From: Haliotis rufescens
Taxonomy: Eukaryota
Reading direction: 5' to 3'
Assembly: GCF_023055435.1 (NCBI RefSeq)
Contig: NW_025963857.1
Location: forward strand, 23,436,001 to 23,500,000
Length of the DNA stretch: 64,000 nucleotides
In this document: piece by piece, positions 1 to 64,000 of the stretch
Layout: each line of letters begins with the position of its first letter
How positions within the stretch are numbered: the stretch's first letter is position 1
Position numbers and translations under genes: made by a program
The notes under the pieces: model-generated
Seen by the model: the letters and a program-made list of their open reading frames with translations, nothing else
Database searches by the model: none
What the model was told of the DNA's origin: nothing

Positions 1-147
1 TACACATGCGAGCTGGTATCCATGAACATCGATTAAGGAAGTACAAGACAACGTATATAAAGGTGGCAAACAGACACACTCTCTCTGGCATCGTCGAACT
101 GCATTTCAAACAGTCCTCGATACTCAATGTTTAACCTATATTATTTA

Positions 148-313
148 GGGGCGGTCGGGTAGCCTAGTGGTTAAAGCGTTCGCTCGTTACGCCGAAGACA
201 CGGGTTCGATTTCCGACATGGGTACAATGTGTGTAGCCCATTGCTGGTGTCCCCCGCCGTGATATTGCTGGAATATTGCTAAAAGTGGCGTAAAACCATA
301 CTCACTCACTCAC
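148..313 (+). mobile_element. tRNA-derived SINE with (CACT)n tail and 14-bp TSD, one per unit
   Basis: Starts GGGGCGG. A-box TAGCCTAGTGG at 160-170, B-box-like GGTTCGATTTCC at 203-214, tail ACTCACTCACTCAC. The flanking direct repeat TTTAACCTATATTA lies at 130-143 and 314-327. Other copies start at 4613, 9078, 13543, 18008, 22473, 34370, 38833, 43307, 47763, 52219, 56675 and 61131. Confidence 0.9.
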
Positions 314-919
314 TTTAACCTATATTAAGTAAATATTCGATAATGGTCTGAAAAGTGTGTATCCAGTAAATATATGATGTGGGAGCAACATACATCAGAC
401 ATTATAATGCATCTGTGTGATACGACATAACATGAGACCAGAAAACTGACGCAATACACCAGTACAGCCTCGCCACAGTACAGCAGTAGCACTGTACCAC
501 ACGAGGTCAACTATGCTAACCGTTTCCGTGTAATACAGCAGCCTGCTCACAAGAAAATAGCTTCTGCTGAATATACTGCAGAAGTCCCCAGATACTACAT
601 TATTCTCCCCGAATTTTATTTATCTTACTGCACAATAACTATAAACTACAACAGCTTTATTTCCTAACTGAAAGGGACATATATTGGTTTCTTCTCACAA
701 AGGGACTGTCACTATGAATACTCACAACACCTTTATATGTGTGTAGTATCTGTTAAAAGCCGAAAGTACACCAGTGTCTTCTGAAAACATGATTGACATA
801 TGAACAACAGCTTGTTTTCTCGTCTTTGTTGACTTGTCTTTGTATGTGTTTGTGACGGTAGAACCGATGGGGCAGGATACGCTTACTTTTTGGCAACCGC
901 CAGGTATCATCACTATCTG

Positions 920-1189
920 GTTGGTTAGTTGGTTGGTTGGTTGTTTAACGCTGCACTCAGCAATATATTACTGCTATATGACGGCGGTCTGTAAATAATC
1001 GAGTCTGGACCAGACAATCCAGTGATTAAAATCATTAGCATCGATCCACCCAATTGGGATCGATGACATGCATCAACCAAGTCAGCGAGCCTGACCACCC
1101 GATCCCGTTAGTCGCCTTTTACGACAAGCATAGTCACCTTTTACGGCAAGCATGGGTTGCTGAAGACCTATATATTCTACCCCGGAATC
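920..1189 (-). mobile_element. Second SINE-like retroposon with (AACC)n tail, 9-bp TSD and no visible tRNA head, one per unit
   Basis: (GGTT)n run at 920-943 is the 3' tail on the minus strand. The flanking direct repeat CACTATCTG lies at 911-919 and 1190-1198. Its 3' end resembles that of the other SINE. Other copies start at 5385, 9850, 14315, 18780, 23245, 35142, 39605, 44079, 48535, 52991, 57447 and 61903. Confidence 0.8.
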
Positions 1190-3271
1190 CACTATCTGAT
1201 AGTCATTCATACGCACATGCTTGTGATCATTATAGTCGGAATCGTACAATGGTCTCTGCTTCGAGCAGAGCTTTCGAATGATTCTGAAAAGGGTTTTGTG
1301 GCGTTTATTTGCAACTGCGTTTCTTGAGAGAACTCTCTTATCTTCAACATATCATCTTGATAATTGTACACTTCATTATCAAGGAATTTGTGATAATACG
1401 AGCATCACTAAATTTGATATCTCAACTTTTAAAGATAACGCCTGAATATTGATATAATAATCATTCAATGATGACCCTTTAACTACATAAATCGTCAACG
1501 ACAGAGAATATTCAGGCTCGATTATCTGTTGAAACAGATTTCATTGGGTGTAAAAGGCAAGATTGTGCTAAAATGTATACTGAATATCAGTGATGTCACC
1601 AGGTGTTAGTGAATAGTTCATATTTGTTGGATGTTTCATGAGCTCCTCCGTCCGTTCCATCGTGTGCCAAATTGGGAGAATGTTGTCTTTTGACAATGTC
1701 TCAGCCATTCATACTTTTGCATATATACTTAATCACTGTTGCAAATAACTCACTTTAACGTGTTTTAATCTTCGGCTGAGTCTTAGGTCGTAAACATTAG
1801 AAGAAAGTATATAAATCGTCTCTACCCTTTACGTATGCCCTTGACATGATGAAGCAGTAGTGATAGTGATGATTGTGTTCTTTTAAGTCGTGTTTAGACC
1901 AAAACTCTTACCAAGAATAAAACACGCGCAAATCAGTTTGACAATGTGTAACTATATAAGGGTTGCCCAGAAAAACCGTACATCTAAAAGTAAAGACGTG
2001 TGTTTTCAGAAGAAAATGCTCTTAAAGTATAACACAAAGGTGTTTTCAAAGATAGACATGATCAAACGACTTGTTTTTACAGTCTGGTTGTTGTTATAAA
2101 GACTTATGACACGCTTTAAAGTTGGACCATTTATTCCGCTGAATTTCACTCTCTACAGTTACCAAATGCAATCTCCTTTGTATTGATAAATGATTGTCAC
2201 TTCTGCTTTGTAATCAAACAATAGGGATATATTAGCTATTTGTTTGTTCATTGTAATCTTCAATCCTACCAATCCAGTTCGGAATCTTCAAATTCGCGCT
2301 CTGATTTAATCAATATGTATTTTACAAATAGCGCCTACAGGGAAGGTGGTTAGTAAACACACAACTAAATATCTATATAGATACTTCTCCTATTAATTAC
2401 ATAAGCAGTATGCAAAATGTTAAATTGCATCATCAAATCAAGAAGTACATGTTTCATGGAAATTACAAATAATTCGTAGTTTGATAAGCTATACCCGGAC
2501 AAGCGTATTTAATAGATACTTTTGAATTCAATCGTTTTGTTTGTGTAATTGATAACCTGTAAAGATATGTTATTGTCATGGAAATTCCAACTGTATGCAT
2601 TCCCTTCTAACCAAAGCAGTAAGAATCTTGCAACATTTGTTTTGATGCTCTACATCACTATGGCTTTCGGGTTTGTTTTATTGCAGCAGCTCAGATATTA
2701 TTTATACAAAGCGCCATAACAACATGTAGATTGTATTCTGAATACAACTTTCGCTCATTTTCAAGGACAGCGCACACATTTGCATTTCAATACAGTGCAC
2801 ACTGTCTACCCCTTGATACCGTCAATGACTGCTTTGACAAAAATTGACACGCCTGCTTATTTGTTTCGCTGCATGTTTTTAAAATGCAAATTGAAATACA
2901 GACAGCCAATTCCAGATATTATGGTACTTCAAATGGCCATCAAACCCTTTCCTGGCAGCCCAAATGATACATTCCCGTGAAACATGAACTCGGGTAAGTG
3001 ACATTTGGTGGGAGATATATCAAGCATAAAATCCCTCCTCTTATCATCATGTCCGGTTTCCTCAGGAACTTAATAGCACATTTCAGTAGTTGATATCTTA
3101 GCTAGCAGTAAAACGCAATATCATTGAAGTGTGCTTGGATATTGGTCGACAACACGTACTATGTCCAGAGTTTACAATATGGAGAAACATAGATCACTCT
3201 TCCATTGTGAACATTCAATTCAGATTAAGATTTTCAAACAAATTTCAAGGCGTAAATAAATATGACAAGAT

Positions 3272-3277
3272 TTTATT
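3272..3277 (-). terminator. AATAAA polyadenylation signal of the Gly-rich gene (same position in each unit)
   Basis: AATAAA lies ~65 nt downstream of the predicted spliced stop codon at 3345-3343. Confidence 0.7.
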
Positions 3278-3342
3278 GAACCAATTCCATTGGTTTGAGA
3301 AAATACATAAATAGCCAGCATCACACTGCAGGTGATAATAAC

Positions 3343-3959
3343 TCAATAATAGCCGATACCTGAAACAAAAAAATAGTAGAATAAAGTTGGGATGTATGGA
3401 TAAGTCACAACGAAGTCTTGAAACTAGCTGCATGATAAACTATACCAAATATTAGAGAAAGCAGAGAATAGTTTTAAAGATGTTTTGTAAATGTCATCAG
3501 CTTTGTCGCTGAAAATAGTAATACCACATAGGTAAATTATGCAATTTTGCAAACGAGACTGGAGGTATATTTACGGATACGATAAACAAATGATATCATA
3601 TTTTGTGAAATACCTTTTCCCAATCCAATTCCGTATCCTCCCATTCCGTAGAGACCACCATAGCCCCCGAGTCCTCCGTACAGACCTCCCATGCCGTATC
3701 CGTATTTGCCTCCGTATAGACCTCCCATGCCTCCGTATATACCTCCCATGCCTCCGTATAGACCTCCCATGCCTCCGTATAGACCTCCATAGCCTCCAAG
3801 ACCTCCAAGACCTCCAAGGCCTCCGTACAATCCACCCATTCCGTAGCCAATTCCGCCCAGTCCTCCTTTCAACCCGCCAATTCCACCATACAGACCGGTA
3901 GGCTCGGCAAAGGCGGTAACAGCCAGGCAGGCAACAAGAGCGGCGACTATCTTCATCAT
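3343..3959 (-). CDS. Secreted Gly/Tyr-rich repetitive protein, copy 1, 120 aa; complement(join(3343..3359,3614..3959))
   Basis: Hydrophobic signal peptide MMKIVAALVACLAVTAFA with an A-x-A cleavage motif, then GGLYGGM/GGL/GGY repeats. Donor AAAG|GTATTT at 3614/3613 and acceptor TTTTTTTGTTTCAG|G at 3360/3359 give in-frame GIGYY-stop. An acceptor also lies 9 nt upstream of the ATG. Confidence 0.9.
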
Positions 3960-4325
3960 TTTGAGTATCTATTGAGTAACGGGAAAATTATTGTCAAGAA
4001 AGGTAAAATAGCATGTTATCGTTACTCATCTGGTAAATTCAGTTCACACCACTCATTGTGAATTATGTTATCAGTTTTGCTTTCACCCGCATTCATATAT
4101 TTCTCAATTTACAAGAACGTCTTATGTTACATATTCGGACTTTTATGAATTGGCTCAACATAAAGATTGAAAACAGCCTGATGCGCAGCAGATGAATCAA
4201 AAATTAAAAGTATACATATATATCACAAGCAAAATTTAAATTAGTACTTGCAGTTTGGTCTTTACTCGTATCTGTGTCTCAACGGCAGGTGAAGATAAGA
4301 GATGATGGAACAGTTTCCCCCGTCC

Positions 4326-4335
4326 TTTATATATA
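4326..4335 (-). promoter_or_regulatory. TATA box of the Gly-rich gene; predicted TSS ~4303 and a short non-coding exon 1 (same in each unit)
   Basis: The minus strand reads TATATATAAAGG, with an Inr-like TCATCT ~30 nt downstream. Candidate donors are GA|GTAAAG (4266/4265) or AA|GTACTA (4248/4247). The acceptor TTTTCCCGTTACTCAATAG|A is at 3969/3968. Confidence 0.7.
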
Positions 4336-7300
4336 CCATTTGTGAATTATACGTGATTGATTTACCTTGGGCTGACCACTTCCAGGTAAGTAACGCACCT
4401 CAGCTTAATGGTGTAAAGTAAGCATTCTTTTCGCATCAAAGGGCCCGAGGTTATCACCCTACGGGTACACATGCGAGCTGGTATCCATGAACATCGATTA
4501 AGGAAGTACAAGACAACGTATATAAAGGTGGCAAACAGACACACTCTCTCTGGCATCGTCGAACTGCATTTCAAACAGTCCTCGATACTCAATGTTTAAC
4601 CTATATTATTTAGGGGCGGTCGGGTAGCCTAGTGGTTAAAGCGTTCGCTCGTTACGCCGAAGACACGGGTTCGATTTCCGACATGGGTACAATGTGTGTA
4701 GCCCATTGCTGGTGTCCCCCGCCGTGATATTGCTGGAATATTGCTAAAAGTGGCGTAAAACCATACTCACTCACTCACTTTAACCTATATTAAGTAAATA
4801 TTCGATAATGGTCTGAAAAGTGTGTATCCAGTAAATATATGATGTGGGAGCAACATACATCAGACATTATAATGCATCTGTGTGATACGACATAACATGA
4901 GACCAGAAAACTGACGCAACACACCAGTACAGCCTCGCCACAGTACAGCAGTAGCACTGTACCACACGAGGTCAACTATGCTAACCGTTTCCGTGTAATA
5001 CAGCAGCCTGCTCACAAGAAAATAGCTTCTGCTGAATATACTGCAGAAGTCCCCAGATACTACATTATTCTCCCCGAATTTTATTTATCTTACTGCACAA
5101 TAACTATAAACTACAACAGCTTTATTTCCTAACTGAAAGGGACATATATTGGTTTCTTCTCACAAAGGGACTGTCACTATGAATACTCACAACACCTTTA
5201 TATGTGTGTAGTATCTGTTAAAAGCCGAAAGTACACCAGTGTCTTCTGAAAACATGATTGACATATGAACAACAGCTTGTTTTCTCGTCTTTGTTGACTT
5301 GTCTTTGTATGTGTTTGTGACGGTAGAACCGATGGGGCAGGATACGCTTACTTTTTGGCAACCGCCAGGTATCATCACTATCTGGTTGGTTAGTTGGTTG
5401 GTTGGTTGTTTAACGCTGCACTCAGCAATATATTACTGCTATATGACGGCGGTCTGTAAATAATCGAGTCTGGACCAGACAATCCAGTGATTAAAATCAT
5501 TAGCATCGATCCACCCAATTGGGATCGATGACATGCATCAACCAAGTCAGCGAGCCTGACCACCCGATCCCGTTAGTCGCCTTTTACGACAAGCATAGTC
5601 ACCTTTTACGGCAAGCATGGGTTGCTGAAGACCTATATATTCTACCCCGGAATCCACTATCTGATAGTCATTCATACGCACATGCTTGTGATCATTATAG
5701 TCGGAATCGTACAATGGTCTCTGCTTCGAGCAGAGCTTTCGAATGATTCTGAAAAGGGTTTTGTGGCGTTTATTTGCAACTGCGTTTCTTGAGAGAACTC
5801 TCTTATCTTCAACATATCATCTTGATAATTGTACACTTCATTATCAAGGAATTTGTGATAATACGAGCATCACTAAATTTGATATCTCAACTTTTATAGA
5901 TAACGCCTGAATATTGATATAATAATCATTCAATGATGACCCTTCAACTACATAAATCGTCAACGACAGAGAATATTCAGGCTCGATTATCTGTTGAAAC
6001 AGATTTCATTGGGTGTAAAAGGCAAGATTGTGCTAAAATGTATACTGAATATCAGTGATGTCACCAGGTGTTAGTGAATAGTTCATATTTGTTGGATGTT
6101 TCATGAGCTCCTCCGTCCGTTCCATCGTGTGCCAAATTGGGAGAATGTTGTCTTTTGACAATGTCTCAGCCATTCATACTTTTGCATATATACTTAATCA
6201 CTGTTGCAAATAACTCACTTTAACGTGTTTTAATCTTCGGCTGAGTCTTAGGTCGTAAACATTAGAAGAAAGTATATAAATCGTCTCTACCCTTTACGTA
6301 TGCCCTTGACATGATGAAGCAGTAGTGATAGTGATGATTGTGTTCTTTTAAGTCGTGTTTAGACCAAAACTCTTACCAAGAATAAAACACGCGCAAATCA
6401 GTTTGACAATGTGTAACTATATAAGGGTTGCCCAGAAAAACCGTACATCTAAAAGTAAAGACGTGTGTTTTCAGAAGAAAATGCTCTTAAAGTATAACAC
6501 AAAGGTGTTTTCAAAGATAGACATGATCAAACGACTTGTTTTTACAGTCTGGTTGTTGTTATAAAGACTTATGACACGCTTTAAAGTTGGACCATTTATT
6601 CCGCTGAATTTCACTCTCTACAGTTACCAAATGCAATCTCCTTTGTATTGATAAATGATTGTCACTTCTGCTTTGTAATCAAACAATAGGGATATATTAG
6701 CTATTTGTTTGTTCATTGTAATCTTCAATCCTACCAATCCAGTTCGGAATCTTCAAATTCGCGCTCTGATTTAATCAATATGTATTTTACAAATAGCGCC
6801 TACAGGGAAGGTGGTTAGTAAACACACAACTAAATATCTATATAGATACTTCTCCTATTAATTACATAAGCAGTATGCAAAATGTTAAATTGCATCATCA
6901 AATCAAGAAGTACATGTTTGATGGAAATTACAAATAATTCGTAGTTTGATAAGCTATACCCGGACAAGCGTATTTAATAGATACTTTTGAATTCAATCGT
7001 TTTGTTTGTGTAATTGATAAACTGTAAAGATATGTTATTGTCATGGAAATTCCAACTGTATGCATTCCCTTCTAACCAAAGCAGTAAGAATCTTGCAACA
7101 TTTGTTTTGATGCTCTACATCACTATGGCTTTCGGGTTTGTTTTATTGCAGCAGCTCAGATATTATTTATACAAAGCGCCATAACAACATGTAGATTGTA
7201 TTCTGAATACAACTTTCGCTCATTTTCAAGGACAGCGCACACATTTGCATTTCAATACAGTGCACACTGTCTACCCCTTGATACCGTCAATGACTGCTTT

Positions 7301-7807
7301 GACAAAAATTGACACGCCTGCTTATTTGTTTCGCTGCATGTTTTTAAAATGCAAATTGAAATACAGACAGCCAATTCCAGATATTATGGTACTTCAAATG
7401 GCCATCAAACCCTTTCCTGGCAGCCCAAATGATACATTCCCGTGAAACATGAACTCGGGTAAGTGACATTTGGTGGGAGATATATCAAGCATAAAATCCC
7501 TCCTCTTATCATCATGTCCGGTTTCCTCAGGAACTTAATAGCACATTTCAGTAGTTGATATCTTAGCTAGCAGTAAAACGCAATATCATTGAAGTGTGCT
7601 TGGATATTGGTCGACAACACGTACTATGTCCAGAGTTTACAATATGGAGAAACATAGATCACTCTTCCATTGTGAACATTCAATTCAGATTAAGATTTTC
7701 AAACAAATTTCAAGGCGTAAATAAATATGACAAGATTTTATTGAACCAATTCCATTGGTTTGAGAAAATACATAAATAGCCAGCATCACACTGCAGGTGA
7801 TAATAAC

Positions 7808-8424
7808 TCAATAATAGCCGATACCTGAAACAAAAAAATAGTAGAATAAAGTTGGGATGTATGGATAAGTCACAACGAAGTCTTGAAACTAGCTGCATGA
7901 TAAACTATACCAAATATTAGAGAAAGCAGAGAATAGTTTTAAAGATGTTTTGTAAATGTCATCAGCTTTGTCGCTGAAAATAGTAATACCACATAGGTAA
8001 ATTATGCAATTTTGCAAACGAGACTGGAGGTATATTTACGGATACGATAAACAAATGATATCATATTTTGTGAAATACCTTTTCCCAATCCAATTCCGTA
8101 TCCTCCCATTCCGTAGAGACCACCATAGCCCCCGAGTCCTCCGTACAGACCTCCCATGCCGTATCCGTATTTGCCTCCGTATAGACCTCCCATGCCTCCG
8201 TATATACCTCCCATGCCTCCGTATAGACCTCCCATGCCTCCGTATAGACCTCCATAGCCTCCAAGACCTCCAAGACCTCCAAGGCCTCCGTACAATCCAC
8301 CCATTCCGTAGCCAATTCCGCCCAGTCCTCCTTTCAACCCGCCAATTCCACCATACAGACCGGTAGGCTCGGCAAAGGCGGTAACAGCCAGGCAGGCAAC
8401 AAGAGCGGCGACTATCTTCATCAT
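7808..8424 (-). CDS. Secreted Gly/Tyr-rich protein, copy 2, 120 aa; exons 8079..8424 and 7808..7824
   Basis: Same protein and splice sites as copy 1, offset +4465. Confidence 0.9.
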
Positions 8425-11400
8425 TTTGAGTATCTATTGAGTAACGGGAAAATTATTGTCAAGAAAGGTAAAATAGCATGTTATCGTTACTCATCTGGTA
8501 AATTCAGTTCACACCACTCATTGTGAATTATGTTATCAGTTTTGCTTTCACCCGCATTCATATATTTCTCAATTTACAAGAACGTCTTATGTTACATATT
8601 CGGACTTTTATGAATTGGCTCAACATAAAGATTGAAAACAGCCTGATGCGCAGCAGATGAATCAAAAATTAAAAGTATACATATATATCACAAGCAAAAT
8701 TTAAATTAGTACTTGCAGTTTGGTCTTTACTCGTATCTGTGTCTCAACGGCAGGTGAAGATAAGAGATGATGGAACAGTTTCCCCCGTCCTTTATATATA
8801 CCATTTGTGAATTATACGTGATTGATTTACCTTGGGCTGACCACTTCCAGGTAAGTAACACACCTCAGCTTAATGGTGTAAAGTAAGCATTCTTTTCGCA
8901 TCAAAGGGCCCGAGGTTATCACCCTACGGGTACACATGCGAGCTGGTATCCATGAACATCGATTAAGGAAGTACAAGACAACGTATATAAAGGTGGCAAA
9001 CAGACACACTCTCTCTGGCATCGTCGAACTGCATTTCAAACAGTCCTCGATACTCAATGTTTAACCTATATTATTTAGGGGCGGTCGGGTAGCCTAGTGG
9101 TTAAAGCGTTCGCTCGTTACGCCGAAGACACGGGTTCGATTTCCGACATGGGTACAATGTGTGTAGCCCATTGCTGGTGTCCCCCGCCGTGATATTGCTG
9201 GAATATTGCTAAAAGTGGCGTAAAACCATACTCACTCACTCACTTTAACCTATATTAAGTAAATATTCGATAATGGTCTGAAAAGTGTGTATCCAGTAAA
9301 TATATGATGTGGGAGCAACATACATCAGACATTATAATGCATCTGTGTGATACGACATAACATGAGACCAGAAAACTGACGCAACACACCAGTACAGCCT
9401 CGCCACAGTACAGCAGTAGCACTGTACCACACGAGGTCAACTATGCTAACCGTTTCCGTGTAATACAGCAGCCTGCTCACAAGAAAATAGCTTCTGCTGA
9501 ATATACTGCAGAAGTCCCCAGATACTACATTATTCTCCCCGAATTTTATTTATCTTACTGCACAATAACTATAAACTACAACAGCTTTATTTCCTAACTG
9601 AAAGGGACATATATTGGTTTCTTCTCACAAAGGGACTGTCACTATGAATACTCACAACACCTTTATATGTGTGTAGTATCTGTTAAAAGCCGAAAGTACA
9701 CCAGTGTCTTCTGAAAACATGATTGACATATGAACAACAGCTTGTTTTCTCGTCTTTGTTGACTTGTCTTTGTATGTGTTTGTGACGGTAGAACCGATGG
9801 GGCAGGATACGCTTACTTTTTGGCAACCGCCAGGTATCATCACTATCTGGTTGGTTAGTTGGTTGGTTGGTTGTTTAACGCTGCACTCAGCAATATATTA
9901 CTGCTATATGACGGCGGTCTGTAAATAATCGAGTCTGGACCAGACAATCCAGTGATTAAAATCATTAGCATCGATCCACCCAATTGGGATCGATGACATG
10001 CATCAACCAAGTCAGCGAGCCTGACCACCCGATCCCGTTAGTCGCCTTTTACGACAAGCATAGTCACCTTTTACGGCAAGCATGGGTTGCTGAAGACCTA
10101 TATATTCTACCCCGGAATCCACTATCTGATAGTCATTCATACGCACATGCTTGTGATCATTATAGTCGGAATCGTACAATGGTCTCTGCTTCGAGCAGAG
10201 CTTTCGAATGATTCTGAAAAGGGTTTTGTGGCGTTTATTTGCAACTGCGTTTCTTGAGAGATCTCTCTTATCTTCAACATATCATCTTGATAATTGTACA
10301 CTTCATTATCAAGGAATTTGTGATAATACGAGCATCACTAAATTTGATATCTCAACTTTTATAGATAACGCCTGAATATTGATATAATAATCATTCAATG
10401 ATGACCCTTTAACTACATAAATCGTCAACGACAGAGAATATTCAGGCTCGATTATCTGTTGAAACAGATTTCATTGGGTGTAAAAGGCAAGATTGTGCTA
10501 AAATGTATACTGAATATCAGTGATGTCACCAGGTGTTAGTGAATAGTTCATATTTGTTGGATGTTTCATGAGCTCCTCCGTCCGTTCCATCGTGTGCCAA
10601 ATTGGGAGAATGTTGTCTTTTGACAATGTCTCAGCCATTCATACTTTTGCATATATACTTAATCACTGTTGCAAATAACTCACTTTAACGTGTTTTAATC
10701 TTCGGCTGAGTCTTAGGTCGTAAACATTAGAAGAAAGTATATAAATCGTCTCTACCCTTTACGTATGCCCTTGACATGATGAAGCAGTAGTGATAGTGAT
10801 GATTGTGTTCTTTTAAGTCGTGTTTAGACCAAAACTCTTACCAAGAATAAAACACGCGCAAATCAGTTTGACAATGTGTAACTATATAAGGGTTGCCCAG
10901 AAAAACCGTACATCTAAAAGTAAAGACGTGTGTTTTCAGAAGAAAATGCTCTTAAAGTATAACACAAAGGTGTTTTCAAAGATAGACATGATCAAACGAC
11001 TTGTTTTTACAGTCTGGTTGTTGTTATAAAGACTTATGACACGCTTTAAAGTTGGACCATTTATTCCGCTGAATTTCACTCTCTACAGTTACCAAATGCA
11101 ATCTCCTTTGTATTGATAAATGATTGTCACTTCTGCTTTGTAATCAAACAATAGGGATATATTAGCTATTTGTTTGTTCATTGTAATCTTCAATCCTACC
11201 AATCCAGTTCGGAATCTTCAAATTCGCGCTCTGATTTAATCAATATGTATTTTACAAATAGCGCCTACAGGGAAGGTGGTTAGTAAACACACAACTAAAT
11301 ATCTATATAGATACTTCTCCTATTAATTACATAAGCAGTATGCAAAATGTTAAATTGCATCATCAAATCAAGAAGTACATGTTTGATGGAAATTACAAAT

Positions 11401-24122: not shown

Positions 24123-24349
24123 TTACATTTAGTACTGACTACTAAATGACTTTATCGCGCGTATCCAAACCATGGGCTAATTACATCTGTAACCCAATCA
24201 CCCCCCGTAACTCAATCACCCCGGGCCACCACTCGGCACCGTGCCCGGGGAATAATCCCGCGCAAGCATCATCCCGCCCTTTGTTAGTCCGTCATTCGCG
24301 AACAGCCCTTCCCCAAGTACACACGTGTGTCACTGTATCTAATCGCTTT
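24123..24349 (+). repeat. Split direct repeat A1 (227 bp); copies at 28021-28247, 29199-29425 and 30377-30603
   Basis: Direct sequence identity from TTACATTTAG to CTAATCGCTTT. Confidence 0.95.
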
Positions 24350-24526
24350 ATTCCAACACTCGCCGTATCGCATTTACACAATCGCGACCTTTTCGCCGAT
24401 TATGCTTTGAATACCACCTATTCCAGCACTCGCCGTATCGCATTTATTCCGTTCTACTCCCGAACTTCACCCTCGGGACAATTTTACGCTTGTGGAATAC
24501 CAACTCACCACCTCGACCTTTTCGTA

Positions 24527-25614: not shown

Positions 25615-25646
25615 CAGAAAACCAGCCGTCAAGGCAGGTAAATTCA

Positions 25647-26961: not shown

Positions 26962-27269
26962 CATGGTGGCATCAATCCTTCGGATACAACCCCAGCTTCC
27001 TGACACCAAGATCATCGTATCCTCAATGCTGCACAGGCGCTACTGGCAAGATGCCAGGGACCCACTAAAGATCGAGGGGATGCGGAAGAATATCAACCGT
27101 CGACTGGCCAACCGAGTCGAAGAGCTCGGCGGTACAATGGTGCCACATCCCCAGATCCTGGCATCAGACAAGACATGGTACGCCTGGGAGGGCGACCACC
27201 TCAGTGACAAAGGACTGTGTGTGTTTACGGACAATTTATTGCATGCCCTGGCGCTTGTTATCTCCACAG
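26951..27269 (+). pseudogene. C-terminal remnant of an SGNH/GDSL hydrolase ORF of the Ngaro element (the raw ORF runs to 27406)
   Basis: PDTKIIVSSMLHR...INRRL...WEGDHLSDKG...F resembles SGNH block V (D-x-x-H-L-S-x-x-G, here with E). The N-terminal blocks are missing and the remnant is fused directly behind the truncated RNase H. Confidence 0.75.
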
Positions 27270-27367
27270 GTTTGTGTTTCCTTTCAGTACATAGGCAACC
27301 CGGGCAACAATGCTATCTCCGCGTATCGCGTGGCCGTGGGTGTGGGGTAGCACTCTGGTGCTTTGTG

Positions 27368-45600: not shown

Positions 45601-46501
45601 GAAGTACATGTTTGATGGAAATTACAAATAATTCGTAGTTTGATAAGCTATACCCGGACAAGCGTATTTAATAGATACTTTTGAATTCAATCGTTTTGTT
45701 TGTGTAATTGATAAACTGTAAAGATATGTTATTGTCATGGAAATTCCAACTGTATGCATTCCCTTCTAACCAAAGCAGTAAGAATCTTGCAACATTTGTT
45801 TTGATGCTCTACATCACTATGGCTTTCGGGTTTGTTTTATTGCAGCAGCTCAGATATTATTTATACAAAGCGCCATAACAACATGTAGATTGTATTCTGA
45901 ATACAACTTTCGCTCATTTTCAAGGACAGCGCACACATTTGCATTTCAATACAGTGCACACTGTCTACCCCTTGATACCGTCAATGACTGCTTTGACAAA
46001 AATTGACACGCCTGCTTATTTGTTTCGCTGCATGTTTTTAAAATGCAAATTGAAATACAGACAGCCAATTCCAGATATTATGGTACTTCAAATGGCCATC
46101 AAACCCTTTCCTGGCAGCCCAAATGATACATTCCCGTGAAACATGAACTCGGGTAAGTGACATTTGGTGGGAGATATATCAAGCATAAAATCCCTCCTCT
46201 TATCATCATGTCCGGTTTCCTCAGGAACTTAATAGCACATTTCAGTAGTTGATATCTTAGCTAGCAGTAAAACGCAATATCATTGAAGTGTGCTTGGATA
46301 TTGGTCGACAACACGTACTATGTCCAGAGTTTACAATATGGAGAAACATAGATCACTCTTCCATTGTGAACATTCAATTCAGATTAAGATTTTCAAACAA
46401 ATTTCAAGGCGTAAATAAATATGACAAGATTTTATTGAACCAATTCCATTGGTTTGAGAAAATACATAAATAGCCAGCATCACACTGCAGGTGATAATAA
46501 C

Positions 46502-47109
46502 TCAATAATAGCCGATACCTGAAACAAAAAAATAGTAGAATAAAGTTGGGATGTATGGATAAGTCACAACGAAGTCTTGAAACTAGCTGCATGATAAACT
46601 ATACCAAATATTAGAGAAAGCAGAGAATAGTTTTAAAGATGTTTTGTAAATGTCATCAGCTTTGTCGCTGAAAATAGTAATACCACATAGGTAAATTATG
46701 CAATTTTGCAAACGAGACTGGAGGTATATTTACGGATACGATAAACAAATGATATCATATTTTGTGAAATACCTTTTCCCAATCCAATTCCGTATCCTCC
46801 CATTCCGTAGAGACCACCATAGCCCCCGAGTCCTCCGTACAGACCTCCCATGCCGTATCCGTATTTGCCTCCGTATAGACCTCCCATGCCTCCGTATATA
46901 CCTCCCATGCCTCCGTATAGACCTCCCATGCCTCCGTATAGACCTCCATAGCCTCCAAGACCTCCAAGGCCTCCGTACAATCCACCCATTCCGTAGCCAA
47001 TTCCGCCCAGTCCTCCTTTCAACCCGCCAATTCCACCATACAGACCGGTAGGCTCGGCAAAGGCGGTAACAGCCAGGCAGGCAACAAGAGCGGCGACTAT
47101 CTTCATCAT
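46502..47109 (-). CDS. Secreted Gly/Tyr-rich protein, copy 9, 117 aa (-GGL); exons 46773..47109 and 46502..46518
   Basis: One fewer 9-bp repeat, in frame. Confidence 0.9.
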
Positions 47110-50100
47110 TTTGAGTATCTATTGAGTAACGGGAAAATTATTGTCAAGAAAGGTAAAATAGCATGTTATCGTTACTCATCTGGTAAATTCAGTTCACACC
47201 ACTCATTGTGAATTATGTTATCAGTTTTGCTTTCACCCGCATTCATATATTTCTCAATTTACAAGAACGTCTTATGTTACATATTCGGACTTTTATGAAT
47301 TGGCTCAACATAAAGATTGAAAACAGCCTGATGCGCAGCAGATGAATCAAAAATTAAAAGTATACATATATATCACAAGCAAAATTTAAATTAGTACTTG
47401 CAGTTTGGTCTTTACTCGTATCTGTGTCTCAACGGCAGGTGAAGATAAGAGATGATGGAACAGTTTCCCCCGTCCTTTATATATACCATTTGTGAATTAT
47501 ACGTGATTGATTTACCTTGGGCTGACCACTTCCAGGTAAGTAACGCACCTCAGCTTAATGGTGTAAAGTAAGCATTCTTTTCGCATCAAAGGGCCCGAGG
47601 TTATCACCCTACGGGTACACATGCGAGCTGGTATCCATGAACATCGATTAAGGAAGTACAAGACAACGTATATAAAGGTGGCAAACAGACACACTCTCTC
47701 TGGCATCGTCGAACTGCATTTCAAACAGTCCTCGATACTCAATGTTTAACCTATATTATTTAGGGGCGGTCGGGTAGCCTAGTGGTTAAAGCGTTCGCTC
47801 GTTACGCCGAAGACACGGGTTCGATTTCCGACATGGGTACAATGTGTGTAGCCCATTGCTGGTGTCCCCCGCCGTGATATTGCTGGAATATTGCTAAAAG
47901 TGGCGTAAAACCATACTCACTCACTCACTTTAACCTATATTAAGTAAATATTCGATAATGGTCTGAAAAGTGTGTATCCAGTAAATATATGATGTGGGAG
48001 CAACATACATCAGACATTATAATGCATCTGTGTGATACGACATAACATGAGACCAGAAAACTGACGCAACACACCAGTACAGCCTCGCCACAGTACAGCA
48101 GTAGCACTGTACCACACGAGGTCAACTATGCTAACCGTTTCCGTGTAATACAGCAGCCTGCTCACAAGAAAATAGCTTCTGCTGAATATACTGCAGAAGT
48201 CCCCAGATACTACGTTATTCTCCCCGAATTTTATTTATCTTACTGCACAATAACTATAAACTACAACAGCTTTATTTCCTAACTGAAAGGGACATATATT
48301 GGTTTCTTCTCACAAAGGGACTGTCACTATGAATACTCACAACACCTTTATATGTGTGTAGTATCTGTTAAAAGCCGAAAGTACACCAGTGTCTTCTGAA
48401 AACATGATTGACATATGAACAACAGCTTGTTTTCTCGTCTTTGTTGACTTGTCTTTGTATGTGTTTGTGACGGTAGAACCGATGGGGCAGGATACGCTTA
48501 CTTTTTGGCAACCGCCAGGTATCATCACTATCTGGTTGGTTAGTTGGTTGGTTGGTTGTTTAACGCTGCACTCAGCAATATATTACTGCTATATGACGGC
48601 GGTCTGTAAATAATCGAGTCTGGACCAGACAATCCAGTGATTAAAATCATTAGCATCGATCCACCCAATTGGGATCGATGACATGCATCAACCAAGTCAG
48701 CGAGCCTGACCACCCGATCCCGTTAGTCGCCTTTTACGACAAGCATAGTCACCTTTTACGGCAAGCATGGGTTGCTGAAGACCTATATATTCTACCCCGG
48801 AATCCACTATCTGATAGTCATTCATACGCACATGCTTGTGATCATTATAGTCGGAATCGTACAATGGCCTCTGCTTCGAGCAGAGCTTTCGAATGATTCT
48901 GAAAAGGGTTTTGTGGCGTTTATTTGCAACTGCGTTTCTTGAGAGAACTCTCTTATCTTCAACATATCATCTTGATAATTGTACACTTCATTATCAAGGA
49001 ATTTGTGATTATACGAGCATCACTAAATTTGATATCTCAACTTTTATAGATAACGCCTGAATATTGATATAATAATCATTCAATGATGACCCTTTAGCTA
49101 CATAAATCGTCAACGACAGAGAATATTCAGGCTCGATTATCTGTTGAAACAGATTTCATTGGGTGTAAAAGGCAAGATTGTGCTAAAATGTATACTGAAT
49201 ATCAGTGATGTCACCAGGTGTTAGTGAATAGTTCATATTTGTTGGATGTTTCATGAGCTCCTCCGTCCGTTCCATCGTGTGCCAAATTGGGAGAATGTTG
49301 TCTTTTGACAATGTCTCAGCCATTCATACTTTTGCATATATACTTAATCACTGTTGCAAATAACTCACGTTAACGTGTTTTAATCTTCGGCTGAGTCTTA
49401 GGTCGTAAACATTAGAAGAAAGTATATAAATCGTCTCTACCCTTTACGTATGCCCTTGACATGATGAAGCAGTAGTGATAGTGATGATTGTGTTCTTTTA
49501 AGTCGTGTTTAGACCAAAACTCTTACCAAGAATAAAACACGCGCAAATCAGTTTGACAATGTGTAACTATATAAGGGTTGCCCAGAAAAACCGTACATCT
49601 AAAAGTAAAGACGTGTGTTTTCAGAAGAAAATGCTCTTAAAGTATAACACAAAGGTGTTTTCAAAGATAGACATGATCAAACGACTTGTTTTTACAGTCT
49701 GGTTGTTGTTATAAAGACTTATGACACGCTTTAAAGTTGGACCATTTATTCCGCTGAATTTCACTCTCTACAGTTACCAAATGCAATCTCCTTTGTATTG
49801 ATAAATGATTGTCACTTCTGCTTTGTAATCAAACAAAAGGGATATATTAGCTATTTGTTTGTTCATTGTAATCTTCAATCCTACCAATCCAGTTCGGAAT
49901 CTTCAAATTCGCGCTCTGATTTAATCAATATGTATTTTACAAATAGCGCCTACAGGGAAGGTGGTTAGTAAACACACAACTAAATATCTATATAGATACT
50001 TCTCCTATTAATTACATAAGCAGTATGCAAAATGTTAAATTGCATCATCAAATCAAGAAGTACATGTTTGATGGAAATTACAAATAATTCGTAGTTTGAT

Positions 50101-59869: not shown

Positions 59870-60477
59870 TCAATAATAGCCGATACCTGAAACAAAAAAA
59901 TAGTAGAATAAAGTTGGGATGTATGGATAAGTCACAACGAAGTCTTGAAACTAGCTGCATGATAAACTATACCAAATATTAGAGAAAGCAGAGAATAGTT
60001 TTAAAGATGTTTTGTAAATGTCATCAGCTTTGTCGCTGAAAATAGTAATACCACATAGGTAAATTATGCAATTTTGCAAACGAGACTGGAGGTATATTTA
60101 CGGATACGATAAACAAATGATATCATATTTTGTGAAATACCTTTTCCCAATCCAATTCCGTATCCTCCCATTCCGTAGAGACCACCATAGCCCCCGAGTC
60201 CTCCGTACAGACCTCCCATGCCGTATCCGTATTTGCCTCCGTATAGACCTCCCATGCCTCCGTATATACCTCCCATGCCTCCGTATAGACCTCCCATGCC
60301 TCCGTATAGACCTCCATAGCCTCCAAGACCTCCAAGGCCTCCGTACAATCCACCCATTCCGTAGCCAATTCCGCCCAGTCCTCCTTTCAACCCGCCAATT
60401 CCACCATACAGACCGGTAGGCTCGGCAAAGGCGGTAACAGCCAGGCAGGCAACAAGAGCGGTGACTATCTTCATCAT
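59870..60477 (-). CDS. Secreted Gly/Tyr-rich protein, copy 12, 117 aa, A6T in the signal peptide; exons 60141..60477 and 59870..59886
   Basis: As copy 9, with a single missense change (MMKIVT). Confidence 0.9.
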
Positions 60478-63400
60478 TTTGAGTATCTATTGAGTAACGG
60501 GAAAATTATTGTCAAGAAAGGTAAAATAGCATGTTATCGTTACTCATCTGGTAAATTCAGTTCACACCACTCATTGTGAATTATGTTATCAGTTTTGCTT
60601 TCACCCGCATTCATATATTTCTCAATTTACAAGAACGTCTTATGTTACATATTCGGACTTTTATGAATTGGCTCAACATAAAGATTGAAAACAGCCTGAT
60701 GCGCAGCAGATGAATCAAAAATTAAAAGTATACATATATATCACAAGCAAAATTTAAATTAGTACTTGCAGTTTGGTCTTTACTCGTATCTGTGTCTCAA
60801 CGGCAGGTGAAGATAAGAGATGATGGAACAGTTTCCCCCGTCCTTTATATATACCATTTGTGAATTATACGTGATTGATTTACCTTGGGCTGACCACTTC
60901 CAGGTAAGTAACGCACCTCAGCTTAATGGTGTTAAGTAAGCATTCTTTTCGCATCAAAGGGCCCGAGGTTATCACCCTACGGGTACACATGCGAGCTGGT
61001 ATCCATGAACATCGATTAAGGAAGTACAAGACAACGTATATAAAGGTGGCAAACAGACACACTCTCTCTGGCATCGTCGAGCTGCATTTCAAACAGTCCT
61101 CGATACTCAATGTTTAACCTATATTATTTAGGGGCGGTCGGGTAGCCTAGTGGTTAAAGCGTTCGCTCGTTACGCCGAAGACACGGGTTCGATTTCCGAC
61201 ATGGGTACAATGTGTGTAGCCCATTGCTGGTGTCCCCCGCCGTGATATTGCTGGAATATTGCTAAAAGTGGCGTAAAACCATACTCACTCACTCACTTTA
61301 ACCTATATTAAGTAAATATTCGATAATGGTCTGAAAAGTGTGTATCCAGTAAATATATGATGTGGGAGCAACATACATCAGACATTATAATGCATCTGTG
61401 TGATACGACATAACATGAGACCAGAAAACTGATGCAACACACCAGTACAGCCTCGCCACAGTACAGCAGTAGCACTGTACCACACGAGGTCAACTATGCT
61501 AACCGTCTCCGTGTAATACAGCAGCCTGCTCACAAGAAAATAGCTTCTGCTGAATATACTGCAGAAGTCCCCAGATACTACGTTATTCTCCCCGAATTTT
61601 ATTTATCTTACTGCACAATAACTATAAACTACAACAGCTTTATTTCCTAACTGAAAGGGACATATATTGGTTTCTTCTCACAAAGGGACTGTCACTATGA
61701 ATACTCACAACACCTTTATATGTGTGTAGTATCTGTTAAAAGCCGAAAGTACACCAGTGTCTTCTGAAAACATGATTGACATATGAACAACAGCTTGTTT
61801 TCTCGTCTTTGTTGACTTGTCTTTGTATGTGTTTGTGACGGTAGAACCGATGGGGCAGGATACGCTTACTTTTTGGCAACCGCCAGGTATCATCACTATC
61901 TGGTTGGTTAGTTGGTTGGTTGGTTGTTTAACGCTGCACTCAGCAATATATTACTGCTATATGACGGCGGTCTGTAAATAATCGAGTCTGGACCAGACAA
62001 TCCAGTGATTAAAATCATTAGCATCGATCCACCCAATTGGGATCGATGACATGCATCAACCAAGTCAGCGAGCCTGACCACCCGATCCCGTTAGTCGCCT
62101 TTTACGACAAGCATAGTCACCTTTTACGGCAAGCATGGGTTGCTGAAGACCTATATATTCTACCCCGGAATCCACTATCTGATAGTCATTCATACGCACA
62201 TGCTTGTGATCATTATAGTCGGAATCGTACAATGGCCTCTGCTTCGAGCAGAGCTTTCGAATGATTCTGAAAAGGGTTTTGTGGCGTTTATTTGCAACTG
62301 CGTTTCTTGAGAGAACTCTCTTATCTTCAACATATCATCTTGATAATTGTACACTTCATTATCAAGGAATTTGTGATTATACGAGCATCACTAAATTTGA
62401 TATCTCAACTTTTATAGATAACGCCTGAATATTGATATAATAATCATTCAATGATGACCCTTTAACTACATAAATCGTCAACGACAGAGAATATTCAGGC
62501 TCGATTATCTGTTGAAACAGATTTCATTGGGTGTAAAAGGCAAGATTGTGCTAAAATGTATACTGAATATCAGTGATGTCACCAGGTGTTAGTGAATAGT
62601 TCATATTTGTTGGATGTTTCATGAGCTCCTCCGTCCGTTCCATCGTGTGCCAAATTGGGAGAATGTTGTCTTTTGACAATGTCTCAGCCATTCATACTTT
62701 TGCATATATACTTAATCACTGTTGCAAATAACTCACGTTAACGTGTTTTAATCTTCGGCTGAGTCTTATGTCGTAAACATTAGAAGAAAGTATATAAATC
62801 GTCTCTACCCTTTATGTATGCCCTTGACATGATGAAGCAGTAGTGATAGTGATGATTGTGTTCTTTTAAGTCGTGTTTAGACCAAAACTCTTACCAAGAA
62901 TAAAACACGCGCAAATCAGTTTGACAATGTGTAACTATATAAGGGTTGCCCAGAAAAACCGTACATCTAAAAGTAAAGACGTGTGTTTTCAGAAGAAAAT
63001 GCTCTTAAAGTATAACACAAAGGTGTTTTCAAAGATAGACATGATCAAACGACTTGTTTTTACAGTCTGGTTGTTGTTATAAAGACTTATGACACGCTTT
63101 AAAGTTGGACCATTTATTCCGCTGAATTTCACTCTCTACAGTTACCAAATGCAATCTCCTTTGTATTGATAAATGATTGTCACTTCTGCTTTGTAATCAA
63201 ACAATAGGGATATATTAGCTATTTGTTTGTTCATTGTAATCTTCAATCCTACCAATCCAGTTCGGAATCTTCAAATTCGCGCTCTGATTTAATCAATATG
63301 TATTTTACAAATAGCGCCTACAGGGAAGGTGGTTAGTAAACACACAACTAAATATCTATATAGATATTTCTCCTATTAATTACATAAGCAGTATGCAAAA

Positions 63401-64000
63401 TGTTAAATTGCATCATCAAATCAAGAAGTACATGTTTGATGGAAATTACAAATAATTCGTAGTTTGATAAGCTATACCCGGACAAGCGTATTTAATAGAT
63501 ACTTTTGAATTCAATCGTTTTGTTTGTGTAATTGATAAACTGTAAAGATATGTTATTGTCATGGAAATTCCAACTGTATGCATTCCCTTCTAACCAAAGC
63601 AGTAAGAATCTTGCAACATTTGTTTTGATGCTCTACATCACTATGGCTTTCGGGTTTGTTTTATTGCAGCAGCTCAGATATTATTTATACAAAGCGCCAT
63701 AACAACATGTAGATTGTATTCTGAATACAACTTTCGCTCATTTTCAAGGACAGCGCACACATTTGCATTTCAATACAGTGCACACTGTCTACCCCTTGAT
63801 ACCGTCAATGACTGCTTTGACAAAAATTGACACGCCTGCTTATTTGTTTCGCTGCATGTTTTTAAAATGCAAATTGAAATACAGACAGCCAATTCCAGAT
63901 ATTATGGTACTTCAAATGGCCATCAAACCCTTTCCTGGCAGCCCAAATGATACATTCCCGTGAAACATGAACTCGGGTAAGTGACATTTGGTGGGAGATA

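What the first reader, a model, noticed from the sequence alone, without database searches (positions are those of the whole stretch)
1..64000. Homogenised, rDNA/histone-style tandem array of a single secreted Gly/Tyr-rich protein gene
Seen: at least 12 intact, co-oriented copies of one spliced gene. Each has a TATA box, splice sites and a polyA signal. The ~4.46-kb units are near-identical even across spacers, introns and old SINEs, none is pseudogenised, and the array runs off both window ends. Established: this organisation is typical of rDNA, histone and snRNA loci, where gene dosage limits output. Inference: a germ-line gene-dosage amplifier for bulk, burst secretion of an extracellular structural material (periostracum or shell matrix, egg coat, radula, adhesive), or of a Gly-rich defence peptide. 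Short-read assemblies would collapse such a locus to one gene, so it may be undescribed.
Basis: partly seen in the sequence, partly recalled or inferred. Interest (0 to 1): 0.85.

Follow-up and report, generated by a model that had tools for sequence, protein, structure and literature searches.

The report
Amplified abalone Gly/Tyr-rich secreted-protein gene array
The window lies inside a real 199-kb head-to-tail array of about 40 near-identical, intact copies (at least 92 genome-wide) of a small abalone-specific gene for a secreted glycine/tyrosine-rich protein. It is probably a cross-linkable shell-edge matrix material made in bulk, but where it is expressed could not be tested.

Summary
The window has 13 complete 4,456-4,474-bp units plus a partial one, 99.5-100% identical. 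Twelve co-oriented minus-strand genes each have a TATA box, three exons, GT/AG introns and a polyA signal.

The whole array spans 199 kb (about 41 units, 39 intact genes) between Cys-loop receptor genes. Three more arrays lie on another contig of at least 41 Mb. A 32-nt start-codon probe hits 92 sites genome-wide.

Evidence for concerted evolution and coding constraint:
- Two SINEs with target-site duplications sit in the C79 units and are absent from both sampled units of the sister arrays.
- Unit divergence rises with distance.
- Exon 2 has a third of the spacer's polymorphism, and only in-frame indels.

The mature product is 102 residues: 54% Gly, 16% Tyr, no Cys, Asp, Arg or His. Only Haliotis proteins match it. 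RefSeq names them glycine-rich or shematrin-like, and models them as consecutive or fused copies. No paper describing the family was found. The closest studied analogue is Has-tsfgr1, a larval shell-field and mantle-edge gene.

Other windows of this scan noted parts of the same arrays.

The parts
1..64000 (-). Segment of the tandem array: 13 complete units of 4,456-4,474 bp and one partial unit (60984-64000). Genes are on the minus strand.
1..4465 (.). Reference unit 1 (gene plus spacer)
4324..4335 (-). TATA box (TATATATAAAGG), 376 nt upstream of the ATG; present in all 12 window copies and 37 of 39 array copies
4248..4305 (-). Exon 1 (5' UTR). The start is inferred from the TATA box. The 3' end at 4248 (CAA|GTACTA) is supported by the H. 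asinina model P0006, which reads ...TQ|ILKMM across the junction.
   Evidence: the transcription start is an inference
3969..4247 (-). Intron 1 (GT...AG, 279 nt)
   Evidence: inferred
3614..3968 (-). Exon 2: ATG at 3959, an 18-residue signal peptide, then GGLYGG(M)-type repeats. It ends in phase 1 at ...GLGK G|GT.
3360..3613 (-). Intron 2 (GTATTT...TTTCAG, 254 nt). The read-through frame varies between copies and loci, as expected of an intron.
3250..3359 (-). Exon 3: completes Gly, then Ile-Gly-Tyr-Tyr-stop (3343-3359), 3' UTR, AATAAA at 3272-3277. The end near 3250 is inferred.
   Evidence: The C-terminus GKGIGYY is the same in the H. asinina and H. cracherodii models.
142..307 (+). SINE 1 with a 12-bp target-site duplication (TTTAACCTATAT). 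It matches in at least 39 C79 units and is absent from both compared C24 units. The family has more than 4,700 first-look candidates genome-wide.
922..1189 (.). SINE 2 with a 9-bp target-site duplication (CACTATCTG). It is present in the C79 units and absent from both compared C24 units. Dispersed copies in the flanks are 87-91% identical.
24124..31554 (+). Retroelement inserted in the spacer of one unit (unit coordinate 1798, no target-site duplication). Reverse-transcriptase ORF at 25870-26961; 1,178-bp tandem repeat, at least 3 complete copies (28021-31554), at the 3' end.
7737..8800 (-). Gene copy 2 (polyA signal to TATA), exon 2 of 115 codons
12202..13265 (-). Gene copy 3, 115 codons
16667..17730 (-). 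Gene copy 4, 115 codons
21132..22195 (-). Gene copy 5, 115 codons
33029..34092 (-). Gene copy 6, in the unit split by the retroelement; the gene is intact, 115 codons
37493..38555 (-). Gene copy 7, 115 codons
41957..43029 (-). Gene copy 8, 118 codons (one extra GGL)
46431..47485 (-). Gene copy 9, 112 codons
50887..51941 (-). Gene copy 10, 112 codons
55343..56397 (-). Gene copy 11, 112 codons
59799..60853 (-). Gene copy 12, 112 codons, Ala-to-Thr change in the signal peptide

Best explanation
Shown: this is a real germ-line tandem array of a Haliotis-restricted three-exon gene. There are about 41 units and 39 intact genes at this locus, and at least 92 copies in the genome. The array is kept near-identical by unequal crossing-over or gene conversion. 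Each copy has its own TATA promoter and encodes an 18-residue signal peptide followed by a 102-residue mature chain of GGLYGG(M)-type repeats ending in GKGIGYY. Inferred: the product is an insoluble extracellular matrix protein that can be cross-linked through tyrosine. It belongs to the same functional class as Has-tsfgr1 and the pearl-oyster shematrins, and is most likely laid down by shell-field or mantle-edge epithelium into the organic outer shell layer. The many copies would serve to raise transcript output from few cells or in a short time.
For: Array and intactness. All 39 C79 exon-2 frames and all 30 sampled C24 frames are open.

Concerted evolution: two SINE insertions with target-site duplications are present in the C79 units and absent from both compared C24 units, which differ by about 5% everywhere else. 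Unit divergence rises with distance (Spearman 0.70; 0 of 2,000 permutations reached it), and the edge units are degenerate.

Coding constraint: exon 2 has 1.45 segregating sites per 100 bp against about 4.4 in non-coding DNA (binomial P = 0.004). The length variants in exon 2 leave all 36 aligned units in frame (exon-2 lengths 106-118 codons), against 2 of 14 non-coding indels that are multiples of three. Gly and Tyr positions are kept, while the hydrophobic positions vary between loci.

Secreted matrix-type product: signal peptide AFA|EP; 54% Gly, 16% Tyr, 14% Leu; no Cys, Asp, Ser, Arg or His; net charge about +2.

Conservation: tandem or fused copies are annotated in H. asinina (consecutive XP numbers with identical proteins) and H. 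cracherodii.

Analogy: Has-tsfgr1 is a 114-aa Gly/Leu/Tyr protein with a 17-aa signal peptide and a C-terminal Tyr. It is expressed at the trochophore shell-field edge and the juvenile mantle edge (PMC2034539). Shematrin genes are tandem in Pinctada, where a dosage role was suggested (PMC4759782).
Against: No motif of the family was found in the held supplements of the adult H. laevigata shell proteome; several of those files were truncated, and trypsin would yield few peptides from this protein. None was found in the SilkSlider supplements either. The link to shematrins and Has-tsfgr1 rests on composition and architecture only. phmmer found no non-Haliotis relative below E = 1e-6. Non-coding DNA is as conserved as coding DNA between the two loci, so homogenisation alone explains much of the identity.
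Confidence: 0.55

Rival explanations
1. The product is a structural protein of another secreted material rather than the shell: radula or jaw matrix, pedal adhesive or mucus, or an egg coat. The copy number serves the same bulk-output purpose.
For: The composition only says extracellular, hydrophobic and rich in Tyr. The ESM Atlas nearest neighbours are arthropod Gly-rich cuticle proteins, all scoring 0.80 or below, so they are leads only. The family is absent from the held adult-shell proteome text. Earlier unchecked notes of this scan report two other amplified arrays for Gly/His and Gly/Lys/His secreted chains in the same genome. From my own knowledge, that chemistry recalls hardened jaws and beaks.
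Against: The only studied protein of like architecture in the genus, Has-tsfgr1, is expressed in the shell field and mantle edge. No tissue data favour any alternative.
Confidence: 0.2
2. The product is a glycine-rich antimicrobial or defence peptide of the ctenidin, acanthoscurrin or NLP-29/31 type, amplified for high constitutive or inducible output.
For: RefSeq's automatic names for relatives include ctenidin-1-like and neuropeptide-like protein 31. Gly/Leu-rich peptides with reported antibacterial activity occur in snail mucus (PMC11206429). The repeat gives continuous GxxxG spacing. AlphaFold drew helices, but at low confidence.
Against: The mature chain has net charge of only about +2 over 102 residues, with no Arg or His and no dibasic processing sites. 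phmmer found no spider or nematode relatives. The database names rest on composition.
Confidence: 0.13
3. The amplification is selfish or neutral: a segment that happens to contain a gene was multiplied like a satellite. Most copies are silent, so the copy number has no dosage function.
For: Spacers, introns and SINEs are as homogeneous as the exons. Transposons have landed in the array and persist. Expression is untested.
Against: All 69 sampled reading frames are open. Polymorphism in exon 2 is reduced and its indels are all in frame. Promoter, splice and polyA signals are kept in all 12 window copies. Arrays of the family exist in other Haliotis species.
Confidence: 0.08
4. The array is an assembly artefact: one or two copies over-expanded, or a haplotig counted as a second locus.
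For: The central units differ by only 2-9 substitutions, so their exact number could be mis-assembled. Read depth was not checked.
Against: There are 183 segregating sites with a smooth distance gradient. Three different transposon insertions sit at different unit positions. Both array ends lie in unique DNA that has no second full-length copy in the genome. The C24 contig is at least 41 Mb long, and both sampled C24 units lack both SINEs.
Confidence: 0.03

Closest known systems
[quoted passage not shown]
   Same: Same genus. It is a small secreted protein (114 aa, 17-aa signal peptide) with more than 52% Gly in Gly/Leu/Tyr repeats and a short C-terminal motif ending in Tyr. The authors proposed it as an elastomeric organic template for the shell.
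   Different: The repeat motif is GGYGLGL and the C-terminus is GYKGY, against GGLYGG(M) and GKGIGYY here. No gene array was reported for it. Its expression is known; that of the present gene is not.
Shematrin family and its tandem cluster in Pinctada fucata (PMC4759782; Yano et al. 2006 as cited there)
   Same: These are Gly-rich repetitive secreted shell proteins ending in Tyr, with genes arranged in tandem. Those authors suggested that copy number might raise transcript output.
   Different: Only five shematrin genes on two scaffolds are reported, and they are diverged paralogues rather than more than 90 near-identical whole units. No sequence homology was detectable. RefSeq's name 'shematrin-like protein 2' for the H. 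cracherodii relative rests on composition.
RefSeq automatic models in other abalones: XP_067657837-849 (H. asinina), XP_071095135/146/156 (H. cracherodii), XP_046565582 (H. rubra)
   Same: This is the same family: the signal peptide, the EP start of the mature chain, the repeat type and the GKGIGYY end all match, at 73-85% identity. The copies are multiple, adjacent and identical, so arrays exist there too.
   Different: They exist only as computed annotation under five different names, and several models are chimeras that run through three or more copies. No protein from this window's own genome was found in the collections searched.
rDNA, histone and fish antifreeze-protein tandem arrays (my own knowledge, not tested here)
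   Same: They show head-to-tail repeats of gene plus spacer, homogenised by unequal exchange. Copy number is commonly read as a dosage device; for antifreeze proteins the product is secreted.
   Different: The product here is a lineage-restricted low-complexity matrix-type protein. Dosage dependence is not shown.

Membership tests
Concertedly evolving tandem gene array (rDNA/histone/antifreeze style) | Head-to-tail, co-oriented units, each with a complete gene and spacer | tested here: met
Concertedly evolving tandem gene array (rDNA/histone/antifreeze style) | Spacers and introns as homogeneous as exons within an array, with greater divergence between arrays | tested here: met
   0-1.4% divergence within C79, against about 5% between C79 and C24 across all parts
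Concertedly evolving tandem gene array (rDNA/histone/antifreeze style) | Array-specific markers fixed in all units of one array | tested here: met
   Two SINEs with target-site duplications are present in the C79 units and absent from both compared C24 units
Concertedly evolving tandem gene array (rDNA/histone/antifreeze style) | Similarity falls with distance, and edge units are degenerate | tested here: met
   Spearman 0.70, 0 of 2,000 permutations reached it; edge units are 96-97.6% identical and rearranged
Concertedly evolving tandem gene array (rDNA/histone/antifreeze style) | Many copies transcribed, with output depending on copy number | not testable with these tools
Shematrin family (Pinctada) | Signal peptide followed by Gly-rich repeats with hydrophobic or aromatic residues between Gly runs | tested here: met
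Shematrin family (Pinctada) | Shared C-terminal motif terminating in Tyr (as described in PMC2034539) | tested here: inconclusive
   The protein ends in GKGIGYY: it has the terminal Tyr and one Lys, but the shematrin motif itself was not available for comparison
Shematrin family (Pinctada) | Detectable sequence homology to Pinctada shematrins | tested here: not met
   phmmer over 1.84 billion representatives found only Haliotis proteins below 1e-10. The six of the seven other hits that were checked were not shematrins.
Shematrin family (Pinctada) | Mantle-edge expression and presence in the shell | not testable with these tools
   No RNA data. No match in the held H. laevigata shell proteome supplements, which is weak evidence because the files were truncated and the digestion used trypsin.
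Glycine-rich antimicrobial peptides (ctenidin, acanthoscurrin, NLP-29/31) | Secreted, with more than 50% Gly | tested here: met
Glycine-rich antimicrobial peptides (ctenidin, acanthoscurrin, NLP-29/31) | Clearly cationic mature peptide (that this defines the family is my own knowledge) | tested here: not met
   3 Lys, 1 Glu, and no Arg or His in 102 residues
Glycine-rich antimicrobial peptides (ctenidin, acanthoscurrin, NLP-29/31) | Sequence homology to a characterised member | tested here: not met
   the RefSeq names are automatic
Has-tsfgr1 class (Haliotis small Gly/Leu/Tyr shell-field proteins) | About 115 aa, 17-18-aa signal peptide, more than 50% Gly with Leu and Tyr repeats, C-terminal Tyr | tested here: met
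   one search compared with the description in PMC2034539
Has-tsfgr1 class (Haliotis small Gly/Leu/Tyr shell-field proteins) | Sequence orthology or paralogy to Has-tsfgr1 | not tested
   The sequence is in a figure only, and no supplement is held as text

The most novel reading that the evidence does not exclude
Abalone genomes may carry a set of very large, homogenised arrays, each multiplying one tiny gene for a secreted low-complexity Gly-rich chain. This family has at least 92 copies. Earlier unchecked notes of this scan report about 130 Gly/His and 61 Gly/Lys/His copies in the same genome. Together they would form a dosage-driven bulk-biomaterial system in which copy number, not promoter strength, sets how fast a few epithelial cells (for example the larval shell field) can lay down matrix. 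Copy number would then be the variable under selection between individuals and species.
Probability: 0.3. Interest if true: 0.75.

Novelty: new member of a known kind. Interest (0 to 1): 0.52.

Why it matters
Tandem duplication of shell-matrix genes is known, but only as a handful of diverged paralogues. Here a lineage-restricted matrix-type gene is multiplied about 90-fold as whole near-identical units, with clear marks of concerted evolution and of selection on the reading frame. If the copies are expressed, abalone offers a protein-coding counterpart of histone or antifreeze arrays for an extracellular material. Copy-diagnostic in-frame indels already mark the units, so dosage and copy usage become directly measurable. 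It is also a practical warning for annotation: pipelines fuse these copies into chimeric 'spidroin-like' or 'PE-PGRS-like' proteins, or miss them entirely.

Tried and rejected
- Tandem Repeats Finder found nothing because its period limit is 500 bp. A k-mer offset spectrum and BLAST replaced it.
The third C24 array, the rest of the second, and the single copies on C190, C423 and C589 were not read.
- Pfam found no family for exon 2. ARAGORN and Rfam found nothing in a unit.
- ESM Atlas gave only arthropod cuticle-like clusters at 0.80 or below, which are leads only.
- AlphaFold2 on the single sequence gave long helices at mean pLDDT 63. I take this for an artefact of a 54%-Gly repeat and did not use it.
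- Motif searches found nothing in paper texts, the H. laevigata shell-proteome supplements or the SilkSlider supplements.
- The radula paper gave nothing relevant.
- The haplotig hypothesis for C24 was rejected.
- The joined exon 2 + exon 3 product was never built, searched or folded. Exons were handled by reference, and the composition was summed per exon.


Full report
**1. Observation**

The window's k-mer offset spectrum has sharp peaks at 4465, 4456 and 4474 bp. BLAST of the first 4,465 bp against the window finds 13 complete co-oriented units and a 3,017-bp partial unit. All are 99.5-100% identical over their whole length.

GC content jumps from about 0.38 to about 0.50 between 24 and 32 kb. 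This marks a 7,431-bp insertion (24124-31554) that splits one unit at unit coordinate 1798. The insertion carries an ORF with a reverse-transcriptase domain (RVT_1, E = 8e-15) and a 1,178-bp tandem repeat at its 3' end. It has no target-site duplication. It lies in a spacer and leaves the genes intact.

Tandem Repeats Finder reported nothing because its longest period is 500 bp.

**2. The gene**

The gene lies on the minus strand. In unit 1 its parts are as follows.
- TATA box at 4335-4324.
- Exon 1 from about 4305 to 4248.
- Intron 1 at 4247-3969.
- Exon 2 at 3968-3614, with the ATG at 3959.
- Intron 2 at 3613-3360.
- Exon 3 from 3359. It completes a Gly codon, adds Ile-Gly-Tyr-Tyr and stops at 3343.
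- AATAAA 65 nt further on.

The exon 2/3 junction is supported by two observations. The reading frame past the donor differs between copies and loci, as expected of an intron. The RefSeq homologues in H. asinina and H. cracherodii end in the same GKGIGYY.

The exon 1/2 junction is supported by an N-terminally extended H. asinina model that reads ...TQ|ILKMM. Here exon 1 ends ...KLQ and exon 2 begins ILKMM, while the genomic base triplet just upstream of exon 2 is the acceptor TAG. The transcription start is inferred only.

All 12 window copies have the TATA box, both coding exons, the donor and acceptor, and the polyA signal. The 9-bp differences in unit length are in-frame GGL repeat-number changes, giving 112, 115 or 118 codons in exon 2.

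I did not build, search or fold the joined exon 2 + exon 3 product. The exons were used by reference, and the residue counts were summed per exon.

**3. The product**

After an 18-residue signal peptide (cleavage at AFA|EP), the mature chain has 102 residues. Its composition is Gly 53.9%, Tyr 15.7%, Leu 13.7%, Met 5.9%, Ile 4.9% and Lys 2.9%, plus one each of Glu, Pro and Thr. It has no Cys, Asp, Ser, Arg or His, and its net charge is about +2.

Pfam finds no family. AlphaFold2 on the single sequence gives helices at mean pLDDT 63, which I discount.

**4. Extent of the array**

The window is C79:23,436,001-23,500,000 of a 1.33-Gb genome in 615 contigs. With 200 kb of added flank, the array runs from 23,343,087 to 23,542,126, which is 199 kb and about 41 units.

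It is interrupted three times:
- a 10.96-kb element at 23,403,691-23,414,652;
- the retroelement described above;
- a 5.7-kb element with loss of unit sequence at 23,525,692-23,531,347.

The units at the two ends are 96-97.6% identical and rearranged.

The array holds 39 gene copies. All have an open exon 2, donor and exon 3, and 37 carry the exact TATA motif. They encode 12 protein isoforms that differ mainly by in-frame repeat indels.

A 32-nt probe over the start codon hits 92 sites in the genome and none in the reversed control. Of these, 39 are on C79. Another 50 are on C24, in three arrays of about 4.0-kb period at 0.57-0.61, 0.84-0.94 and 1.04-1.10 Mb. Single hits lie on C190, C423 and C589. 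The 30 C24 copies I could read all have an open exon 2 and encode a Val-containing isoform.

**5. Not an artefact or a haplotig**

The 36 aligned units carry 183 segregating sites. Divergence rises smoothly with physical distance: adjacent units differ by 2-29 substitutions and the most distant by up to 64. Spearman's rho is 0.70, and 0 of 2,000 permutations reached it.

Both array ends abut unique DNA that has no second full-length copy in the genome. C24 is at least 41 Mb long.

The flanks on both sides carry exons of Cys-loop ligand-gated channel genes.

**6. Concerted evolution**

C79 and C24 units are 93-96% identical in promoter, exons, introns and spacer alike. Within C79 the divergence is at most 1.4%.

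The roughly 450-bp difference in period is explained by two SINE insertions in the C79 unit, at 142-307 and 922-1189. They have target-site duplications of 12 and 9 bp, and the two C24 units compared show clean empty sites. SINE 1 belongs to a family with more than 4,700 first-look candidates. In that search, 39 of the 40 scored matches were C79 array units, and the only non-array copy scored is 96% identical.

The whole C79 array therefore descends from, or was fully homogenised to, one unit that carried both SINEs.

**7. Selection**

Exon 2 has 5 segregating sites in 346 bp, against about 4.4 per 100 bp in non-coding DNA (binomial P = 0.004). All exon-2 length variants keep the reading frame, whereas only 2 of 14 non-coding indels are multiples of three.

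All 69 sampled reading frames are open.

Between loci, the first 51 residues are identical. Changes fall on the hydrophobic positions between the Gly-Gly pairs (8 non-synonymous and 6 synonymous codon differences), while Gly and Tyr are kept. This is the pattern expected when composition and periodicity matter, rather than exact sequence.

**8. Relatives and literature**

The word-index searches and a full phmmer scan of 1.84 billion representatives found only Haliotis proteins below E = 1e-10.
- H. asinina: 'glycine-rich protein-like' and 'neuropeptide-like protein 31'. The XP numbers are consecutive, with identical 101-aa proteins on one 52.9-Mb chromosome. A 1,967-aa 'PE-PGRS-like' model clusters with them.
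- H. cracherodii: 'shematrin-like protein 2' and 'spidroin-1-like'. The 346-aa model visibly runs through three gene copies.
- H. rubra: 'ctenidin-1-like'.

So arrays of this family exist in other abalones, known only as automatic and partly chimeric annotation. No protein from this window's own genome was found in the collections.

I found no paper on the family.

The nearest studied protein is Has-tsfgr1 of H. asinina. It has 114 aa, a 17-aa signal peptide, Gly/Leu/Tyr repeats and a C-terminal Tyr. It is expressed at the edge of the trochophore shell field and the juvenile mantle edge, is switched off in larger animals, and was compared by its authors to shematrins (PMC2034539).

In Pinctada, five shematrin genes lie in tandem. 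Those authors raised the idea that copy number increases transcript output (PMC4759782).

**9. Reading**

Shown: the array is real and large. It evolves in concert. Its genes are intact and under frame and composition constraint. The product is a secreted-type Gly/Tyr/Leu chain restricted to Haliotis.

Inferred: it is a bulk extracellular matrix protein cross-linkable through Tyr, most likely from shell-forming epithelium. From my own knowledge, mussel periostracin has a similar Gly/Tyr-dominated composition. Also inferred: the copy number serves output.

The rivals are another secreted material, a Gly-rich defence peptide (weakened by the near-neutral charge and lack of homology), silent selfish amplification (weakened by the constraint evidence), and an assembly artefact (unlikely).

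**10. Context from the scan**

Other first-stage notes cover parts of the same arrays (s1-806691, s1-811105, s1-808120) and the two other transposon interruptions (s1-816388, s1-813761); my coordinates agree with theirs. Two followed-up notes report other amplified arrays for Gly/His and Gly/Lys/His secreted chains in this genome (s1-814383, s1-814385). I did not check those. They motivate the novel case.

Noticed in passing
window 24124-31554: A 7.4-kb GC-rich retroelement is inserted without a target-site duplication. It has three ORFs, one with an RVT_1 domain. The first 227 nt of the element recur at the start of each of three complete 1,178-bp tandem copies at its 3' end, so the element ends exactly where a fourth copy would begin. 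The element type was not determined.
   Followed up: partly
C79:23,403,691-23,414,652 and C79:23,525,692-23,531,347 (L011-L012; L017-L018): Two further interruptions of the array. One is a 10.96-kb element splitting a unit at coordinate 976/978. The other is a 5.7-kb element accompanied by loss of unit sequence. Both match earlier notes of the scan. Neither has been spread to other units.
   Followed up: partly
L001:3-779 (+), L003:5532-6089 (-), L004:2577-3017 (-), L019:7866-8471 (-): Exons of Cys-loop ligand-gated ion-channel genes (Neur_chan_LBD and Neur_chan_memb) lie on both sides of the array, so the array sits inside a receptor gene cluster.
   Followed up: partly
G000:C589:1,413,376-1,416,334: A lone copy of the gene's start lies 736 bp from a 93%-identical copy of the dispersed repeat found 4-6 kb left of the C79 array, in the same relative orientation. 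It may be a segmental copy of the array edge that seeded a new site, or it may be chance. The sequence could not be fetched.
   Followed up: no
L002:1806-2894 (+): An intact-looking 363-aa Tc1/mariner-type transposase ORF (DDE_3, HTH_Tnp_Tc3_2) lies in the left flank.
   Followed up: no
P0007, P0008, P0016 (RefSeq models of H. asinina and H. cracherodii): The annotation pipeline fuses tandem copies into long chimeric proteins of 346, 979 and 1,967 aa, named spidroin-1-like, PE-PGRS54-like and shematrin-like. Gene counts for this family in public annotations are therefore unreliable.
   Followed up: partly
C79:23,531,348-23,542,126 (L018-L019): The right-edge units carry a 158-bp internal duplication (unit coordinates 2385-2542 appear twice) and are only about 97.5% identical to the centre. 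This fits edges that escape homogenisation.
   Followed up: no
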